Part shown: positions 36,124 to 62,829 of the stretch, piece by piece
Layout of the letters: every line of letters begins with the position of its first letter
Position numbering within the stretch: the first letter of the stretch is position 1
Virus record (IMG/VR): IMGVR_UViG_3300027985_000843
Coordinates: 307,740-371,739 of that record
DNA length: 64,000 bases
Direction: 5' to 3' (one strand)
Notes under the pieces: generated by a model
Told to the model about the DNA's origin: nothing
Databases searched by the model: none
The model's input: only the letters and a program-made list of their open reading frames with translations
Position numbers and translations under genes: made by a program

Positions 36124-37545
36124 ATGGTCACAGAATCAGACCTCCTAATCCACGGGCTCTCGAAAGCTTCCAGCGAAGCCTACACGAAAAGCTGGAAAGA
36201 GTTCGAGACCTGGTGCCAGGCGAACGGCAGATCAGCCCTCCCGGCCTCTGTCGAGACCATGGTGGAGTTCATCAAGAGCCACGAAGAGAAGTGGTCCGCT
36301 TCCACCCTGAGCCGAGCTGCGGCCGCCATCGCCAAGATCCACGTCCTGTACGGGGCCAGGTCCCCTGTCCAAGACGAGGCCAAGTTCATCCTCAAGAGCT
36401 TGGAAGCACAGCAGGAGCCCAACAGCAAAAAGGCCCTCACGAAAGACGAGTTCGAGACACTAGTTAGGCACACGAGCGGGCAGTCCCTCAAAGACATGCG
36501 GGACAAGGCTATGCTCCTGTTGGGCGTCTACACGGGCATGCCCATCGATACCCTGGTGGCCCTGCAAACAGAGCACATTGTCGAAGACAACGGCCGTTGG
36601 ACCATCGAGGTCGACGACTACCGGGTCGACTTCGACTTTGCTGTTGAACCCATCCCAAGCTTGTCCGCTTGGCTGAACTTCGCGAACATCGAAAAAGGCT
36701 ACGTTTTCCGCAATGTTCGGAAGAATGATACGCTGGGAGAGGGCAGCATCGGCTCGCGCCAGGTCAACCGCCTGCTCAAGAACCTTGCCACCAAAGCGGG
36801 GCTCGACGCCAAGGGCATCTCCTACGATTCGCTTCGTCGGAGCTTCCAGAATTCGGTCGGGCAGAAGATCGCCGTGGTCGTCCAAAAAACGGTTCGGCCC
36901 CGGACCTCTCCCAGCCTCCAGCGAGCCCTCTCCGACCTGGTCGAAGTGAAGGCTCAGGAAAAGCAGCTCCTCCAGGACTGGGTCGAAGCCTCCGAACGTG
37001 CTGAGGCCCTAAGCAAAGAGCTGAACCTCGTCACGGCACAGCTCCAGCAGATCCGTCAGGCCACCCAGGCCCACACGGTCACTGCGGACAGCAGCACACA
37101 AGACCTTCTCCGGTCCCTACTCTCCGGCTCGAAAACCCCCGAGGAGTGCCTTCAGCTCCTCGCCACGGCCTATCCCGAACGGATTGTGGTGCTGCCCTCA
37201 GCCGTGGCCTCTGCCCAGAAGGCACGCGCCTTCCGCTTCACAGACAAGCTGTTGCAGCTCTTCGATAAGCTCGCAACCGTCTACTTCGAGGCCCTGGCCT
37301 CAGGGAAGGGAGATACCGGCGCATACGCCTACATGGGGTGGAGCTATGCCGCCAACGACAGCTTCGGAAGCGCGTCCGCCAAGAAGCGGCGGGTCTTCGA
37401 ATACAAGGGCCAAGACATCCTCATGGAGAAGCACCTGCGGATCGGTCAGAAGCCCTCCCCCTCCGAAACCATCCGCGTCCACTTCGAGTGGATCGCCCCC
37501 GAGAAAAAGATCGTCATCGGCTGGTGCGGCCGCCACCTGGAGTAA
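36124..37545 (+). CDS. Degenerate Cre-like tyrosine-recombinase fold fused to coiled coil and possible RelE-like C-terminal domain
   Basis: SAM-like N-terminus (W..F..WC...PAS.ET..FI...S.STL); RD.AMLLLG..TGMP (Arg to Pro); SYDSLRR (His to Asp); no C-terminal Tyr motif; C-terminus MEKHLRIG...TIRVHF.W...KIVIGWCGRHL. Confidence 0.7.
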   Translation: MVTESDLLIHGLSKASSEAYTKSWKEFETWCQANGRSALPASVETMVEFIKSHEEKWSASTLSRAAAAIAKIHVLYGARSPVQDEAKFILKSLEAQQEPNSKKALTKDEFETLVRHTSGQSLKDMRDKAMLLLGVYTGMPIDTLVALQTEHIVEDNGRWTIEVDDYRVDFDFAVEPIPSLSAWLNFANIEKGYVFRNVRKNDTLGEGSIGSRQVNRLLKNLATKAGLDAKGISYDSLRRSFQNSVGQKIAVVVQKTVRPRTSPSLQRALSDLVEVKAQEKQLLQDWVEASERAEALSKELNLVTAQLQQIRQATQAHTVTADSSTQDLLRSLLSGSKTPEECLQLLATAYPERIVVLPSAVASAQKARAFRFTDKLLQLFDKLATVYFEALASGKGDTGAYAYMGWSYAANDSFGSASAKKRRVFEYKGQDILMEKHLRIGQKPSPSETIRVHFEWIAPEKKIVIGWCGRHLE

Positions 37546-51401: not shown

Positions 51402-52036
51402 CCCGGACTAAGGCACTTGTGTGCACACGCTTAATGAAAACCCGCACCGAGCCAAATCCCGGTGCCACGGGAGAGATCCCAACCTGCGTGCCACCGGCAC
51501 AGCACAGGGCGTCGTACGCCCAGAAGGATGAACATGTCCCACATATTGCAACTGCAAAGATCTCAAGGCCCTCTCGCGGTTCAACGTACATCCTCCAGAT
51601 TTCCGGGTGGGGCCGTAATTGCTCGCGGTCTTCTCATGGGTGAAGACCTAGCCACTCTCTGGGGTGTTCGTAACCCGGATGAATTCGACCCCTTCGCCTG
51701 GGCCAAGACAGGCACCGACCCAATTGACGAGTATCTGAGGAGACATACCTGGTCCGACGAATTCAAGACAGCCATGAAGTGGGCTGCCGAAGGGGCCCCT
51801 CCAGAGCTACATGGGCCGGGTATGGATGTTGATGGTATACGGGAAAAGTGGCCTAGAGCCCTGTTGGTTGCTGCTCACGGGTATGACCGGTTCATGCGGG
51901 CCAGGTGGACCGATCAGAACTGGGAGATCTTCGATCCAGCTCCCCTTTTGACTCCAAAGCGCTCTAGCTAGCCCCACGCCCCTTCGCGCCACCATCGACA
52001 CCGCCCACTCTCACACGAACGGTGTATGGTACCAGT

Positions 52037-53683
52037 ATGACAAAACCATGCATCCAAGAGAATGTTCTTGTCACCCCCCCATCAAGCCCAAGGGTGCGGG
52101 GAGGTCTACTCCCCCGAGTTTTCAGAACCCTTCAACAAACTCTTGGAACCATGAAAATCTCCTGGCAGATGCTCTGGCTACGGGAAGCCCCCATCCGAGA
52201 CGTCCACGTCACCTCTCGCATCTGGCTCCCCCACAAGGGCTGGTCGCTCCCAACACACCCGCCTGACCACTCCACCCTCACCCTCTGCCCCGTCCGACTC
52301 GACGACGCCAAACGGTGGATCCAATACCGGGCCGACAAGCTCGAAACCGCAAAAGGCGTCCTCTGGGCTCTCGTCCGCGACCCACGCGAAGGCGATGGCA
52401 CCCACATCAACATCGCCCTCGCCTGGCTTCCAGAAGGCTACACCATGTCCGGGGGCGAGGACGACAACCCACCCCACCCGAGGCTCGACTTCCACGAGGT
52501 CCACGATCCAAAAAGTGAGATTGAAGAGTTCCTTGCTGACTTTTCTGACCCCAATACAGCAGAGGTTCCCCTCGTTGTCCCCAGAAAATGGAAGCCAAAG
52601 AAGCCTCTGCAAGAGCATAACCCTACGGCTGCCTCTCAATGGCACCCTACAAAAAACGGAACAATCACACCTCAAGATGTAGGAGTGGGATCCAAGTACA
52701 ATGCCTGGTGGGTGTGTCCTGAAGGGCATACTCACCAGGCACCCGTTTTCCAGAAGGCCCGTGCTGGTGAGCCCGGCTCACACAGACCCTACTCCAACGG
52801 GTGCCCAACATGTCACAAGATACGACGCTCATTAGGTTGGGGGCCCGGCAAAAACTGCCTGGCAGCTAGAAAACCAGAAGTGGCCGAAGACTGGCACCCT
52901 GACAACAAGCTCCGATCGGATGAAGTGGGTTGGTCTTCTCAGGCAGTTGCCAAGTGGCGTTGTAAAACCTGCAAGCACGTGTGGGAAGCCAGCATCTTCT
53001 CAAGGTGCTGGCCCTCAAGAGCAGAGCTTAGCTGCCCCGTGTGTGTACAAAAGTTGGCGGAAAACGGAGATCCGCACGCTAAACGAAGGGCGGGGACGAC
53101 GCCCTCGCTAGCTGAGAGCCTGCCTGGGCTTGCGAAACTTTGGCATCCCACAAAGAATGGCAGCTTGACCCCTGATGATGTCACAGAGCACACCACCAAG
53201 GTAATTTGGTGGATCTGTTCCGAGGGTCATGAGTGGGAGGCTCCTGTGAAGCTCAATCGGCAGCGGTGTTTACAGTGCCGTCAAGAGAAGTCTGTAAGAA
53301 AAGCTGAAAAGGTGCGAACCGCCAACCGATTGAAGAAACAACGATGGGAACCTCTTCTGCCGTATTGGGATGATCAGAACGGCCCCGTGCCCTGGACTAC
53401 ACGCCCAAGTGTCCTAAAAAGTGTGACCTGGAGCTGTCCTGAGGGTCATGTGTGGGAAGCCACCGGGCGGCTCATGTCGAGAAAACCATTGTGCCCATAC
53501 TGTTACTTCCTCAAGCACCTGAAGAACGAATGGCAAGGCTCCGGCCTCCCCGACCTGTCCAAAAGTTACTGGTGGAGGTGCTCCTGCGGGGTCGTCTGGA
53601 AAGCTTCCTTGGCCGTCAGGGTAGGGATGAGCATGGACTACGATCATGGCCCCCCTAACTGCCCGTACTGTTCTCAGCTCTAA
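52037..53683 (+). CDS. Multi-copy treble-clef zinc-ribbon (DUF4379-like) protein
   Basis: Repeated WHP.KN...P..V...WW.C..GH.W.A...CP.C units. Confidence 0.85.
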   Translation: MTKPCIQENVLVTPPSSPRVRGGLLPRVFRTLQQTLGTMKISWQMLWLREAPIRDVHVTSRIWLPHKGWSLPTHPPDHSTLTLCPVRLDDAKRWIQYRADKLETAKGVLWALVRDPREGDGTHINIALAWLPEGYTMSGGEDDNPPHPRLDFHEVHDPKSEIEEFLADFSDPNTAEVPLVVPRKWKPKKPLQEHNPTAASQWHPTKNGTITPQDVGVGSKYNAWWVCPEGHTHQAPVFQKARAGEPGSHRPYSNGCPTCHKIRRSLGWGPGKNCLAARKPEVAEDWHPDNKLRSDEVGWSSQAVAKWRCKTCKHVWEASIFSRCWPSRAELSCPVCVQKLAENGDPHAKRRAGTTPSLAESLPGLAKLWHPTKNGSLTPDDVTEHTTKVIWWICSEGHEWEAPVKLNRQRCLQCRQEKSVRKAEKVRTANRLKKQRWEPLLPYWDDQNGPVPWTTRPSVLKSVTWSCPEGHVWEATGRLMSRKPLCPYCYFLKHLKNEWQGSGLPDLSKSYWWRCSCGVVWKASLAVRVGMSMDYDHGPPNCPYCSQL

Positions 53684-54584
53684 ATCCAGGTAGAAATTCG
53701 AGAAAGTCTTCCATCTCTCGTGCACACTCCTTGGGTGTAGCTTGTTGGTCAAGAGCTTGACTCACCGTCCAGCCCAACTTCAGACGGCTTCGGATCCTAT
53801 TTACTGGGATCTGAAGGTGCTCGGACCACTCGACCAGTGTGAGCGTCTTGCCTCCGTACGAAAGACGTGTGTTCCCCCTGTTGTTCCTTGCTTGCTGCTC
53901 CAATGTAGCCCATCGACAATTATCCGGTTCATAGTTCCCGTCATTATTGACTCGGTCTAGGCTAAGTCCCTTGTGACAGGGACCCATGTCTTTCAAGAAG
54001 GCTAAAAAACTCTCCACCCATCGGTCACAGACAGTGATTCCCCTGCCCCCGTAATCGTCCCACGCCGGATGTCTTGGATTGGTGCATCGTGAAATCATGG
54101 CTTGCCACGCTAAATACGTAGGCGTCCCAGACATGCCGTGCTGTTCCCTCAGCTTCTCAGACTTTTGCCGACCCCTCTGTTGCCCTTTTGGCCTAATTCT
54201 CGGGTCGAGTACCTCTTCGATAGCCCACCCTGCCTTCAGTCGGTTGTATATGTTGTGCCTCTTCATTCCCAACCGTTCCGCCCACTCAGGTACCGACAAC
54301 GTCACCCCACCCAACGTCAACCGGACCGTCTTCCGCGTGTTTCTCGCCTGTTGCTCCCTCGTAGCCCACCGACAATTGCCCGGCTCGTAGTTCCCGTCCG
54401 GGTCAATCCGGTCAAGTGACCACCCTTTTCCTGGACGCCGCCCCATATCTTCCAGGAAGTTGTCGAAAACCTCCCATCGCTCACACACCCGGATCCCACG
54501 CCCACCGTAGTCCGGATGGTCGTTCCGGCATCGGGTGAGCATCGAATGCCACACGTGATATTCAGGCAGGTTTGATGACGCCAT
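53655..54584 (-). CDS. Tandem double HNH homing-endonuclease-like protein
   Basis: Two copies of W..M..RC...YGGRGI.VC.RW...SLDR...DGNYEP.NCRWAT..QQARN plus HTH; class II promoter. Confidence 0.88.
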   Translation of the reverse strand: MASSNLPEYHVWHSMLTRCRNDHPDYGGRGIRVCERWEVFDNFLEDMGRRPGKGWSLDRIDPDGNYEPGNCRWATREQQARNTRKTVRLTLGGVTLSVPEWAERLGMKRHNIYNRLKAGWAIEEVLDPRIRPKGQQRGRQKSEKLREQHGMSGTPTYLAWQAMISRCTNPRHPAWDDYGGRGITVCDRWVESFLAFLKDMGPCHKGLSLDRVNNDGNYEPDNCRWATLEQQARNNRGNTRLSYGGKTLTLVEWSEHLQIPVNRIRSRLKLGWTVSQALDQQATPKECAREMEDFLEFLPGFRAENSTGS

Positions 54585-54681
54585 GCCTAGAACATACACC
54601 GGACGACCCTGTGGACGAACAAGCAGGGGCCGCCAAGGCGGCCCCTGCTTGTTCCCTGCCCCCTCCTGCCCATCTGACCGC

Positions 54682-54732
54682 CCGAAGAGAGGCAGCATCG
54701 CCCTGCCGAAGAGAGGCAGCATCGCCCTGCCG
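54682..54732 (+). repeat. 24-bp tandem repeat x2 (ccgaagagaggcagcatcgccctg)
   Basis: Direct duplication; ggcag/ctgcc stem. Confidence 0.85.
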
Positions 54733-55269: not shown

Positions 55270-55452
55270 CCCTGGGCAGGGGGCGTAGCCCGAGGCCCTG
55301 GGCAGGGGGCGTAGCCCGAGGCCCTGGGCAGGGGGCGTAGCCCGAGGCCCTGGGCAGGGGGCGTAGCCCGAGGCCCTGGGCAGGGGGCGTAGCCCAGGGG
55401 GCGTAGCCCGAGGCCCTGGGCAGGGGGCGTAGCCCGAGGCCCTGGGCAGGGG
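55270..55452 (+). repeat. 26-bp tandem repeat (ccctgggcagggggcgtagcccgagg), about 7 copies
   Basis: Unit starts at 55270, 55296, 55322, 55348, 55374, 55414, 55440; one 14-bp partial duplication; inverted copies near 55485 and 55517. Confidence 0.95.
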
Positions 55453-61844: not shown

Positions 61845-62018
61845 TCAGCCCTCGACCTCAAGACGGTCAAGGATCGCAAGCATGGCCTTCAGATTCGTCC
61901 GCATGGTCCCGTGAACATCCCGGGAAGGTGGCTCCCCGATCACGGCCTGCACATCCGCTTGCAGCCCCTCAAGGCACCGCACGAGGATGGCCTCTTCCTT
62001 CGCTGTTGGTTCTCGCAT
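61845..62018 (-). CDS. Hypothetical protein (57 aa)
   Basis: AGGAGG SD immediately after the CCA of the tRNA-like RNA; MREPTAKEEAILVRCLEGL... Confidence 0.7.
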   Translation of the reverse strand: MREPTAKEEAILVRCLEGLQADVQAVIGEPPSRDVHGTMRTNLKAMLAILDRLEVEG

Positions 62019-62028
62019 CTCGCCTCCT

Positions 62029-62159
62029 TGGTGGAGCTGACCGGAATCGAACCGGCTTCCCCGTTCACGGTCTGCCTAAAGGCCCTTCTCGGGCCATCCA
62101 GGTCCCCCCGGCCCTGGCCTAGCTTTCGCTCGAACGGGAGGTGCCATACCTCCAGCCCC
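62029..62159 (-). ncRNA. 131-nt tmRNA-like/tRNA-Ala-like RNA
   Basis: 5' GGGGCUG pairs with CAGCUCC-A-CCA 3' (G3.U70, A73); T arm GCCGG-UUCGAUU-CCGGU; helix CCCGUUC/GAACGGG; 3-nt linker GAA. Confidence 0.8.
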
Positions 62160-62162
62160 GAA

Positions 62163-62429
62163 TCACACCCTGCTGAAGTCCACCACCTGGGTCATGGCCT
62201 TGATCGTCTGCGCATAGGTCGTCGAAGCAATCCAGATGGCAAGGTCGTAGCTCCCAGGGGTTCTGTCCTTCGGAAACGTCTCCTGGAAGCACTGCCACAG
62301 GCCCATCCCCCACTCGGGGTCAGGATCCTCACCCCGATGCACGGCAAGCTGAACCTGCTCGCGGGCCGCGTCGATAGCCCAGGTGATGATTGCTTCGTTG
62401 CTCTTGCCGATTTCGTTCAAGGTTGCCAT
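62163..62429 (-). CDS. Hypothetical protein
   Basis: Class I promoter; stop 3 nt before the tRNA-like RNA. Confidence 0.75.
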   Translation of the reverse strand: MATLNEIGKSNEAIITWAIDAAREQVQLAVHRGEDPDPEWGMGLWQCFQETFPKDRTPGSYDLAIWIASTTYAQTIKAMTQVVDFSRV

Positions 62430-62451
62430 GCCCGTACTACGATCCCCGGCC

Positions 62452-62829
62452 TCAAGAGTTCGGAGAATTCTTTCCCCTGGCCTTCCGCTGCCGCTCCGCC
62501 TCCCGCTCCAGGGCGGGGTACTTCCCTGGAGGAAGCCCGCACAGGCCGGCAAGCTCCGGCCCCATGTCCCGAGCCAGTTGCCGCCGCTCCCGCCTCACGG
62601 CCTCTTGCTCCCGCCGCTCTGCCTCCTCCCTACGGGCCCTCAAGATGTCCCGTAGCCTCCCTATGTCTGTCCTCACCTTGAACAGGATGAGACCCTCACC
62701 ACGGCCCTCCAGGAAGGCTTCCCCGGCCAGGGACTCAGCCACCATCGCTTCCAAGGTCGCGTCGTCGATGAGCCTCACGTCCCCTCGATCAAACGCATCC
62801 CATGCTGCTCGCATTGTCGAACGTTCCAT
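62452..62829 (-). CDS. Hypothetical protein
   Basis: GGAGG SD; track ORF. Confidence 0.65.
   Translation of the reverse strand: MERSTMRAAWDAFDRGDVRLIDDATLEAMVAESLAGEAFLEGRGEGLILFKVRTDIGRLRDILRARREEAERREQEAVRRERRQLARDMGPELAGLCGLPPGKYPALEREAERQRKARGKNSPNS

What the first reader, a model, noticed from the sequence alone, without database searches (positions are those of the whole stretch)
62029..62159. Miniature tmRNA-like RNA: alanyl-tRNA shell with a three-hairpin insert and no clear tag frame
Seen (minus strand, 131 nt): acceptor GGGGCUG/CAGCUCC with G3.U70, A73 and encoded CCA; canonical T arm; a 14-nt D region containing GG; helix CCCGUUC/GAACGGG; a 3-nt GAA linker. The anticodon loop is replaced by about 65 nt forming AGC-GAAA-GCU, CCAGG/CCUGG and GGCCC/GGGCC hairpins. 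It lies 3 nt after a stop codon and directly before an SD. Established: G3.U70 specifies alanylation, and this geometry matches the tmRNA tRNA-like domain, but tmRNAs are about 350 nt with pseudoknots and a tag ORF. Inference: an alanylatable mimic that may rescue ribosomes without degradation tagging, sequester SmpB or EF-Tu, decoy anticodon nucleases, or be an intron-containing tRNA. The SmpB-associated UCGA D-loop motif is absent. Short internal frames ending at UGA exist (ARAGGTWMAREGPLGRP* or RP*) but are unproven.
Basis: partly seen in the sequence, partly recalled or inferred. Interest (0 to 1): 0.82.

Follow-up and report, generated by a model that had tools for sequence, protein, structure and literature searches.

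The report
Anticodon-less alanine tRNA mimic in phage
A huge phage from a hydrothermal-vent metagenome carries a 131-nt gene with the amino-acid-accepting half of an alanine tRNA but a 65-nt insert instead of an anticodon, so it resembles the tag-less mini-tmRNAs already known from phage DS6A, but it is a singleton that lacks their hallmark motifs.

Summary
On the minus strand at 62159..62029 there is a perfect 7-bp acceptor stem (G3·U70, A73, encoded CCA), a canonical T arm, a 14-nt D region, a 7-bp closing helix and a 3-nt linker. A 65-nt insert replaces the anticodon loop. A shell like this arises by chance at about 0.4% of window positions.

The acceptor and T-arm parts are letter-identical to cellular tRNA-Ala genes, mostly Acidobacteriota, and not to tmRNA. 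ARAGORN and Rfam do not call the element at default thresholds. The best Rfam family is tmRNA, aligned end to end, at 20.7 bits against a gathering score of 47.

The kind is not new. Tag-less tmRNAs are published for jakobid mitochondria, plastids and mycobacteriophage DS6A, and the DS6A form inhibits host tmRNA. I located the DS6A gene and found at least 17 further mini-tmRNAs of 118-143 nt in IMG/VR.

The window element lacks their UYGAC D-loop and GAC linker. A model built from the minis does not separate it from ordinary tRNA-Ala.

I found no homologue, so there is no covariation test, and no RNA run was listed. The three-hairpin insert is only one of several competing folds, and no credible tag frame exists.

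Verdict: probably a real alanylatable tRNA-Ala/tmRNA-like mimic, a new variant of a known kind, with its function unproven.

The parts
62029..62159 (-). Whole 131-nt tRNA-Ala / tmRNA-like RNA gene
   Evidence: Sequence. RF00023 aligns globally over exactly these ends. The mini-tmRNA model R1 does the same.
62153..62159 (-). Acceptor 5' strand GGGGCUG (RNA 1-7), G3 of the G3·U70 pair
   Evidence: Identical to the 5' strand of Acidobacteriota tRNA-Ala.
62139..62152 (-). D region GAGGUAUGGCACCU (RNA 8-21). It can form a 4-bp hairpin (9-12/18-21) or stay a loop. It contains GG and GGUAU but no UYGAC.
62132..62138 (-). Closing helix 5' strand CCCGUUC (RNA 22-28)
   Evidence: Pairs 7 of 7 with RNA 94-100.
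62067..62131 (-). 65-nt insert replacing the anticodon loop (RNA 29-93). It contains AGC-GAAA-GCU (62130-62121), CCAGG/CCUGG (62117-62099) and GGCCC-GAGAA-GGGCC (62096-62082).
   Evidence: insert z = -1.4, several competing folds, only the last hairpin robust. Unique sequence, not a repeat.
62060..62066 (-). Closing helix 3' strand GAACGGG (RNA 94-100)
62057..62059 (-). 3-nt linker GAA (RNA 101-103), at the position of the GAC linker of tmRNA tRNA-like domains and of the 5-nt variable loop of tRNA-Ala
62040..62056 (-). T arm GCCGG-UUCGAUU-CCGGU (RNA 104-120)
   Evidence: Identical to tRNA-Ala of 43 species genomes.
62029..62039 (-). Acceptor 3' strand CAGCUCC, discriminator A, encoded CCA (RNA 121-131)
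62163..62429 (-). Gene A, an 88-aa ORFan with a leaderless start. Its stop TGA lies 3 nt before the RNA.
   Evidence: No family match. No homologue among 5.8 billion proteins.
62435..62464 (-). ECF-sigma-like promoter motif TCCGAAC-N16-CGTAGTA, 5 nt before the ATG of gene A. It is the likely promoter of the unit that contains the RNA.
   Evidence: The motif recurs before at least 15 genes. Calling it ECF-like rests on my own knowledge of AAC/CGT promoters.
61845..62018 (-). Gene B, a 57-aa ORFan. Its SD AAGGAGG (62029-62023) overlaps the terminal A of CCA.
61849..61873 (-). Terminator-like hairpin followed by a T-rich tail at the end of gene B
   Evidence: One site was found and 0.9 are expected, so this is weak.

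Best explanation
This is a real, phage-encoded, anticodon-less alanine-tRNA mimic. Its acceptor stem and T arm are copied from a tRNA-Ala, probably the host's and possibly an Acidobacteriota tRNA-Ala. Its D and anticodon half has been remodelled into a short D region, a 7-bp helix and a 65-nt insert. That gives the topology of the tmRNA tRNA-like domain.

Inferred mechanism:
1. It is transcribed from the ECF-like promoter as part of a gene A - RNA - gene B unit.
2. RNase P cuts at G1, and the 3' end is trimmed to the encoded CCA.
3. Host AlaRS charges it through G3·U70 and A73.
4. It has no anticodon, so it cannot decode.
5. It then acts like the published CDS-less phage tmRNA of DS6A. It would compete with host tmRNA, or with tRNA-Ala-binding factors, and so damp trans-translation or tagging during infection. 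Less likely, it accepts stalled peptides without adding a degron.

Shown here: the anatomy, its non-chance nature, the tRNA-Ala identity of the shell, and the precedents. Inferred: expression, processing, charging and any effect on ribosome rescue.
For: - All three helices are perfect, 19 bp in total. The only two G·U pairs are the same two found in Acidobacteriota tRNA-Ala.
- Chance of such a shell is 0.39%.
- The 35 shell nucleotides are identical to tRNA-Ala, while everything between them differs completely. That pattern points to selection on the minihelix rather than decay of a pseudogene.
- The best Rfam family is tmRNA, aligned globally, E = 4.7e-07 for that small search.
- The D region (14 nt) and the linker (3 nt) match tRNA-like-domain dimensions and not tRNA dimensions.
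- Precedent: the DS6A CDS-less tmRNA inhibits endogenous tmRNA (PMC11915505, citing Mao et al. 2009). I located it at JN698994 28478-28560, likewise just after an ORF stop.
- At least 17 further mini-tmRNAs are on viral contigs, with covariation in the acceptor, P2a and T stems. The two that were scored against Rfam (L075 and L177) pass the gathering score.
- G3·U70 as the AlaRS determinant and RNase P processing are established for both tRNA-Ala and tmRNA (PMC3985003).
Against: - It is a singleton. No homologue was found in IMG/VR. Gene A has no relative at all. There is no syntenic relative. So no covariation test is possible.
- No RNA run was listed, so expression is unknown.
- RF00023 gives only 20.7 bits against 47.
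- It lacks the UYGAC D-loop end and the GAC linker that DS6A and the minis carry. The deformed D arm is what SmpB contacts extensively (PMC3985003), so SmpB binding is doubtful.
- The mini-tmRNA model gives 34.8 bits, against 29-33 for ordinary tRNA-Ala genes and 42-57 for other minis.
- The fold is no more stable than shuffled sequence.
Confidence: 0.45

Rival explanations
1. Non-functional relic. Either a phage tRNA-Ala gene, or an attP-type copy of the host tRNA-Ala 3' end, has been disrupted or rearranged and is no longer used.
For: - The 28-nt identity to the 3' end of cellular tRNA-Ala has the size of a typical att core.
- att-like duplications of this very 3' end exist in an Acidobacteriota MAG (L031).
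- A tyrosine-integrase-like gene is in the window at 36124-37545.
- No homologue, no expression data, and no detector calls it at default thresholds.
Against: - An attP copy needs neither a matching 5' acceptor strand nor a closing helix. Getting both by chance has p of about 0.004.
- The integrase-like gene is 25 kb away.
- A decaying tRNA should keep traces of its D arm and anticodon stem and accumulate mismatches in its stems. Here the stems are perfect and the middle part is entirely different.
Confidence: 0.2
2. Mainly a cis-acting processing signal. A tRNA-like structure inside the bicistronic transcript recruits RNase P and 3' processing enzymes, separating the gene A and gene B mRNAs. 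The released RNA would have no role of its own.
For: - The element fills the whole intergenic space: 3 nt after the stop of gene A, with the SD of gene B overlapping CCA.
- It lies within one promoter-to-terminator unit.
- DS6A and L075 minis also sit directly after ORF stops.
Against: - Co-transcription of phage tRNA genes with ORFs is ordinary and needs no special role.
- A mere RNase P signal needs neither G3·U70, A73 and an encoded CCA, nor a 65-nt insert.
Confidence: 0.15
3. An intron-containing tRNA gene. About 62 nt are removed to give a 69-nt cloverleaf tRNA.
For: - ARAGORN with introns allowed and the threshold lowered to 70% calls tRNA-Ile(GAU) with a 62-nt intron.
- In-silico excision gives products that ARAGORN accepts at its default threshold in 5 registers.
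Against: - The call does not depend on register (Thr, Ile or Leu).
- Every version has C33 instead of U33, a 3-bp/5-nt D arm and a 3-nt variable loop.
- The acceptor identity is alanine while the anticodon would not be.
- 62 nt is far too short for a group I intron, the only tRNA intron type known in bacteria and phages (own knowledge). No intron or ribozyme family matched even at E <= 10.
- The insert is not a mobile repeat.
Confidence: 0.05
4. A true, very small tagging tmRNA whose message is the internal frame GCC...UGA (ARAGGTWMAREGPLGRP*), or a permuted two-piece tmRNA that uses the second GGGGCUG at 61966-61960.
For: - The frame starts with an Ala codon just after a UAG.
- Rfam permuted models hit the T arm, CCA and downstream GGGGCUG at 31.2 and 20 bits.
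- ARAGORN at a 50% threshold reports a permuted tmRNA.
Against: - All these scores are far below threshold (gathering scores 47 and 84).
- The downstream GGGGCUG lies inside gene B, which has a strong SD.
- The putative tag does not end in a hydrophobic ...AA degron, and its stop overlaps the closing helix.
- At 66% G+C an open 17-codon frame is expected in about two of three cases (own estimate).
- Rfam aligned no pseudoknot positions.
Confidence: 0.03

Closest known systems
CDS-less tmRNA of mycobacteriophage DS6A (Mao et al. 2009, as cited in PMC11915505); gene located here at JN698994 28478-28560
   Same: - Phage-encoded.
- Has G3·U70, an acceptor stem and a T arm.
- No anticodon, no tag frame and no pseudoknots.
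- Sits directly after an ORF stop inside an operon.
- Missed by standard annotation.
   Different: - DS6A is 83 nt, with a plain hairpin instead of a 65-nt insert.
- It keeps the tmRNA hallmark D-loop (GGUGGUCGAC) and a CAC linker.
- It scores 43 bits on RF00023 and 57 on the mini model. The window element scores 20.7 and 34.8.
118-143-nt non-permuted mini-tmRNA genes on IMG/VR contigs (L075, L177, L187-L202)
   Same: - Same size class (131 nt against 118-143).
- Same architecture: acceptor, D region, 7-bp helix, insert, 3-nt linker, T arm.
- GGUAU in the D region.
- GAGCGAAAG, shared with L187, at the start of the insert.
   Different: - All of them have the UYGAC D-loop end. That was a search criterion, so it is not an independent finding.
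- 15 of 17 have the GAC linker, which was not a criterion.
- Many share inner motifs (UAACU-GCC-CAYGG, AAGGCGCACAG) that the window element lacks.
- Their T arms are not tRNA-Ala copies.
tRNA-like domain of standard bacterial tmRNA (Rfam RF00023)
   Same: - Upper-half tRNA mimic with G3·U70, processed by RNase P and charged by AlaRS (PMC3985003).
- The model aligns end to end.
   Different: - No mRNA-like domain, no pseudoknots and no tag.
- The D arm lacks the conserved motif that SmpB contacts.
- The score is below the gathering threshold.
Mitochondrial (jakobid) and plastid CDS-less tmRNAs (Jacob et al. 2004; PMC11915505; PMC3985003)
   Same: Reduced tmRNAs that lack a tag and pseudoknots yet are conserved.
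   Different: They are organellar, mostly shorter (about 65 bp in plastids) or permuted, and co-occur with an imported SmpB. No homology to them was shown here.
Cellular tRNA-Ala (especially Acidobacteriota tRNA-Ala-UGC)
   Same: The acceptor stem (7+7 nt), the T arm, A73 and CCA are letter-identical.
   Different: There is no anticodon stem-loop. The D arm is shortened and unrelated in sequence. The linker is 3 nt instead of a 5-nt variable loop. It is not called as a tRNA.

Membership tests
tmRNA (RF00023, one-piece) | Acceptor stem with G3·U70, discriminator A, 3' CCA | tested here: met
   G3·U70 is completely conserved in tmRNA (PMC3985003).
tmRNA (RF00023, one-piece) | tRNA-type T arm adjoining the acceptor 3' strand | tested here: met
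   GCCGG-UUCGAUU-CCGGU, aligned with high posterior probability.
tmRNA (RF00023, one-piece) | Deformed D arm: unpaired D-loop ending in U(C/U)GAC, and a GAC linker before the T stem (the SmpB contact region) | tested here: not met
   The D region is GAGGUAUGGCACCU and the linker is GAA. The Rfam consensus, DS6A and the minis have the motif.
tmRNA (RF00023, one-piece) | Score at or above Rfam's gathering score | tested here: not met
   20.7 bits against 47. No hit at gathering threshold. ARAGORN finds none.
tmRNA (RF00023, one-piece) | mRNA-like domain: resume codon, tag ORF ending in a degron, stop codon, flanking pseudoknots | tested here: not met
   Rfam aligns almost none of the internal model positions. 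The only frame, ARAGGTWMAREGPLGRP*, has no ...AA end and is expected by chance (own estimate). No pseudoknot predictor was run.
tmRNA (RF00023, one-piece) | Binds SmpB, is alanylated, enters stalled ribosomes | not testable with these tools
   Needs biochemistry.
Phage CDS-less mini-tmRNA (DS6A type) | Non-permuted tRNA-like domain closed by a helix, short insert, no tag, phage-encoded | tested here: met
   Compare DS6A and the minis.
Phage CDS-less mini-tmRNA (DS6A type) | Scores with a family covariance model clearly above ordinary tRNA-Ala | tested here: not met
   On model R1 the element scores 34.8 bits. tRNA-Ala controls score 29-33, DS6A 56.9 and L078 41.9.
Phage CDS-less mini-tmRNA (DS6A type) | Inhibits host trans-translation | not testable with these tools
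   Reported for DS6A only (PMC11915505, citing Mao et al. 2009).
tRNA-Ala (RF00005) | Alanine acceptor and T-arm identity elements | tested here: met
   The exact 25-mer occurs in 43 tRNA-Ala genes. The 5' strand is identical.
tRNA-Ala (RF00005) | 5-bp anticodon stem with a 7-nt loop, U33 and an Ala anticodon; standard D arm and variable loop | tested here: not met
   The loop is replaced by 65 nt. ARAGORN and Rfam make no tRNA call. Within the clan, tmRNA outscored tRNA.
Intron-containing tRNA | A canonical cloverleaf after removing the insert | tested here: inconclusive
   ARAGORN accepts 69-nt products in 5 registers. All have C33, a 3-nt variable loop and a 3-bp D stem.
Intron-containing tRNA | A recognisable intron class (group I, or archaeal bulge-helix-bulge) | tested here: not met
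   No intron or ribozyme family matched at E <= 10. 62 nt is too short for group I (own knowledge).
Permuted two-piece tmRNA (RF04321, RF01850) | 3' piece followed by a 5' piece with D-loop and tag; score at or above gathering | tested here: not met
   31.2 bits against 47, and 20 against 84. The 5' piece would lie inside gene B.

The most novel reading that the evidence does not exclude
The element is not a degenerate tmRNA. It represents an independent invention: a phage has taken the acceptor/T-arm minihelix of its host's tRNA-Ala and fused it to a new 65-nt domain. The result is an SmpB-independent, alanylatable, non-decoding RNA. It could act as a decoy for host factors that attack or sense tRNA acceptor ends, as a sink for AlaRS or EF-Tu, or as an alanine donor outside translation. 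That would be a second evolutionary route to tmRNA-like topology, convergent with the tRNA-like domain.
Probability: 0.2. Interest if true: 0.75.

Novelty: new variant of a known kind. Interest (0 to 1): 0.5.

Why it matters
Phage interference with ribosome rescue is barely explored. One tag-less phage tmRNA, from DS6A, has been shown to inhibit host tmRNA.

This element, together with the 17 or more mini-tmRNAs found on viral contigs along the way (all missed by ARAGORN), suggests that small alanine-accepting, non-decoding RNAs are a recurrent phage tool.

The window element is the most divergent of them. Its shell is a letter-perfect copy of a cellular tRNA-Ala and it lacks the SmpB-contact motif. 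If it is functional, it would show how far the tRNA-like domain can be stripped down. It would also test whether alanylation alone is the useful property.

The exact match to Acidobacteriota tRNA-Ala also offers a host clue for a 372-kb vent phage.

If the element turns out to be a relic, the finding is ordinary.

Tried and rejected
**Detectors**
- ARAGORN at default settings and with introns allowed found nothing. Rfam at gathering thresholds found nothing.

**Homologue searches**
- megablast and blastn against 50,697 phage records hit only T-arm/acceptor matches to tRNAs and tmRNAs.
- The exact 25-mer and the correct structural patterns in IMG/VR returned only the source contig itself.

**My error**
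They could not have matched the element.
- L004 and L049-L064 come from that wrong register. L004 has no T arm.
- therefore says nothing about homologues in metagenomes.

**Candidates discarded**
- L183-L186, L079, L080 and L125 are ordinary tRNA-Ala genes with a chance upstream GGGG.
- L136 is a tRNA-Tyr. L089 is two tandem tRNAs. L168 and L159 are unconvincing.

**Flanking proteins and synteny**
- Pfam, PHROGs, the 5.8-billion-protein search and the ESM Atlas gave nothing.
- Synteny through the DUF3102 neighbour gave no relative carrying the RNA.

**Expression**
- No RNA run was listed.

**Explanations tested and not adopted**
- Self-cleaving ribozyme or group I intron in the insert: no Rfam hit at E <= 10.
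- Insert as a mobile repeat: it is unique.
- Menderavirus and Acinetobacter phage BUCT628 'tmRNA' hits are ordinary permuted two-piece tmRNAs, not minis.

**Not obtainable or not done**
- Mao et al. 2009 and Jacob et al. 2004 could not be read. Their content is cited second-hand.
- The other 308 kb of the contig was not fetched. Presence of SmpB, AlaRS, tRNAs or a full tmRNA in this phage is unknown.

Full report
**1. What is there**

On the minus strand, 62159..62029 reads GGGGCUG-GAGGUAUGGCACCU-CCCGUUC-[65 nt]-GAACGGG-GAA-GCCGG-UUCGAUU-CCGGU-CAGCUCC-A-CCA.

- All three helices are perfect: acceptor 7 bp, inner helix 7 bp, T stem 5 bp.
- The only wobble pairs are G3·U70 and the G·U that closes the T stem.
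- The upstream ORF (gene A, 62429..62163) stops 3 nt before G1.
- The SD AAGGAGG of gene B (62018..61845) overlaps the last A of CCA.

It is not chance.
- The T-arm/acceptor pattern is expected 0.04 times in the window even with three mismatches.
- Given that 3' end, a compatible 5' acceptor strand plus a 7-bp inner helix in generous geometry occurs at 0.39% of window positions.
- The shell-constrained fold is as stable as the unconstrained MFE, -60.6 against -60.7 kcal/mol.

The weak points:
- Stability is no better than shuffled sequence in this 66% G+C context: z = -1.3 overall and z = -1.4 for the insert.
- Only one of the three insert hairpins survives across near-optimal folds.

**2. Where it sits**

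- The window is the last 64 kb of IMGVR_UViG_3300027985_000843, a 371,739-bp viral contig.
- Public runs holding the sequence are DNA runs of hydrothermal-vent metagenomes. No RNA run was listed.
- A Logan assembly reproduces the locus without a difference, though possibly from the same sample.
- The window carries HNH endonucleases, an integrase-like gene and mostly ORFans. It has no tRNA gene.
- Many small genes, on both strands, are preceded by TCCGAAC-N16/17-CGTAGTA-N5-ATG. By my own knowledge of AAC/CGT promoters this looks like an ECF-sigma promoter driving leaderless mRNAs.
- The RNA lies inside one such unit: promoter, gene A, RNA, SD-gene B, terminator-like hairpin.
- Both proteins are ORFans.

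**3. What the detectors say**

- ARAGORN and Rfam at curated thresholds report nothing.
- With flanks included, Rfam's permuted-tmRNA models pair the T arm and CCA with a second GGGGCUG that lies inside gene B. The scores are sub-threshold, and I regard this as accidental.
- On the 131 nt alone, the standard tmRNA model aligns from its first to its last position over exactly the proposed ends. The score is 20.7 bits against a gathering score of 47. It still outcompetes the tRNA model within the clan.
- ARAGORN calls an 'intron tRNA' only at 70% of its threshold.

**4. Origin of the shell**

The 3' 25-mer occurs in 44 of 185,579 species genomes.
- 43 occurrences are tRNA-Ala genes: 42 called by ARAGORN plus one cut by a contig end.
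- 31 of these are in Acidobacteriota, including Aminicenantes and Thermoanaerobaculia.
- Only one occurrence is a tmRNA.

Against those tRNA-Ala genes the element is identical over the 7-nt 5' strand and the 28-nt T arm and 3' strand. It is unrelated everywhere in between.

The same sample holds a high-depth k-mer with one mismatch covering just that 3' end.

So the shell is a tRNA-Ala copy, and the host may be an acidobacterium. That is a weak inference from one oligomer. Perfect retention of the minihelix with total remodelling of the rest argues for selection on AlaRS, RNase P and EF-Tu recognition, not for decay.

**5. Relatives in kind**

I found no homologue of the element itself.

Two of my structural patterns were mis-registered by one base. 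That wasted the only metagenome scan. The absence of homologues is therefore established only for IMG/VR and the phage records.

The corrected scans did uncover a class of non-permuted mini-tmRNA genes on viral contigs.
- L075 and L177, 132 nt each, pass the Rfam tmRNA gathering score at 57 and 66 bits. ARAGORN misses them.
- A D-loop-motif scan gave 18 loci, 17 of them distinct, of 118-143 nt. All have 7/7 acceptor and 5/5 T-stem pairs.
- Their alignment shows compensatory changes in the acceptor, closing helix and T stem.

**6. Literature**

- The 2025 tmRNA database paper states that mitochondrial tmRNAs lack a tag frame. It reports roughly 65-bp CDS-less plastid forms.
[quoted passage not shown] 2009).
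[quoted passage not shown] They describe G3·U70 as completely conserved and jakobid forms as lacking tag and pseudoknots (PMC3985003).
- I located the DS6A gene, unannotated, at JN698994 28478-28560, 10 nt after the gp33 stop. It scores 43 bits on RF00023 and 57 bits on my mini model.
- Searches for mini, minimal or truncated tmRNA in phages found nothing else.

**7. Is the window element a member?**

In topology and dimensions, yes: a 14-nt D region, a 7-bp helix, a 3-nt linker and no tag.

By the discriminating features, no.
- It lacks the UYGAC end of the D-loop.
- Its linker is GAA instead of GAC.
- A covariance model built from the 17 minis gives it 34.8 bits. That barely exceeds ordinary tRNA-Ala genes (29-33) and falls below DS6A (56.9) and L078 (41.9).

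Shared GGUAU in the D region, and GAGCGAAAG shared with L187, are suggestive only.

I therefore file it as working like a CDS-less tmRNA or tRNA-Ala mimic, not as a demonstrated member of the tmRNA family.

**8. Rivals**

- attP fragment or relic: the 28-nt tRNA identity fits. The 5' strand and inner helix would have to be chance (p about 0.004), and no integrase is adjacent.
- Processing signal: plausible as a side effect, but it does not explain the alanine identity set.
- Intron tRNA: in-silico excision yields products that ARAGORN accepts. The result is register-independent, with C33 and non-canonical D and variable regions, and no known intron type fits. The insert is not a repeat.
- Tagging tmRNA: no degron-like frame and no pseudoknots.

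**9. Verdict**

The structure is real. This example is a divergent, tRNA-Ala-derived singleton without the SmpB-contact motif. Expression, charging and function remain untested. I rate it a new variant of a known kind, of moderate interest.

Noticed in passing
window, + strand 6254, 15339, 20583, 21756, 57073; - strand 63227, 62447, 61822, 61468, 61147, 60636, 60352, 56353, 56081: A conserved motif TCCGAAC-N16/17-CGTAGTA-N5-ATG stands directly before at least 14 small genes. It looks like an ECF-sigma-type promoter (AAC ... CGT) giving leaderless mRNAs, which suggests a phage-specific sigma factor regulon.
   Followed up: partly
L075 5115-5246(-), L177 11267-11398(-), and the matches in L187-L202 (coordinates): At least 17 distinct non-permuted mini-tmRNA genes of 118-143 nt lie on IMG/VR viral contigs. 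ARAGORN did not call the two it was run on (L075 and L177), and those same two pass the Rfam tmRNA threshold. Subgroups share inner motifs (UAACU-GCC-CAYGG..., AAGGCGCACAG, AAAGGCCCAYG). L195 and L200 would encode 5-residue tags (AHGKT*, AYKQT*), while sister sequences have CGA at the stop position.
   Followed up: partly
L206 (JN698994, Mycobacterium phage DS6A) 28478-28560 +: The published CDS-less tmRNA of DS6A is not annotated in the GenBank record. It lies between gp33 and the DNA polymerase III gene gp34. The phage also encodes an RtcB-like RNA ligase (gp76).
   Followed up: yes
L031 5595-5791 (Acidobacteriota MAG CAVTON010000002.1): The last 34 nt or so of tRNA-Ala(UGC), including the trailing ATTT, are duplicated 121 nt downstream of the gene. 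This looks like an att-type scar of an integrated or excised element at this tRNA.
   Followed up: no
window 55270-55452: A perfect 26-bp tandem repeat of about 7 copies (CCCTGGGCAGGGGGCGTAGCCCGAGG) lies in a local G+C peak of 64%.
   Followed up: partly
window 61960-61966 (-): A second GGGGCUG lies inside gene B, 63 nt after the CCA. It makes Rfam's permuted-tmRNA models and low-threshold ARAGORN report a 'permuted tmRNA'. I judged this accidental.
   Followed up: yes
window 62028-62055: In the public runs, a separate 31-mer unitig at about twice the phage's depth covers only the T arm and acceptor 3' strand, with one mismatch. Abundant organisms in the same sample carry a nearly identical tRNA-Ala 3' end, so they are possible hosts.
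   Followed up: no
L078 1216-1335 (-): An AT-rich 120-nt mini with a perfect acceptor stem and T arm but a non-canonical D loop (UAUUGGAAUGUA) and an AUA linker. Like the window element it lacks UYGAC and GAC. It scores 41.9 bits on the mini model.
   Followed up: no
window 36124-37545 (+), 52022-53683 (+), 53655-54722 (-): A tyrosine-integrase-like gene, a protein with five DUF4379 treble-clef zinc-finger repeats, and a strong HNH endonuclease. These are mobile-element-type genes within a huge-phage contig.
   Followed up: no
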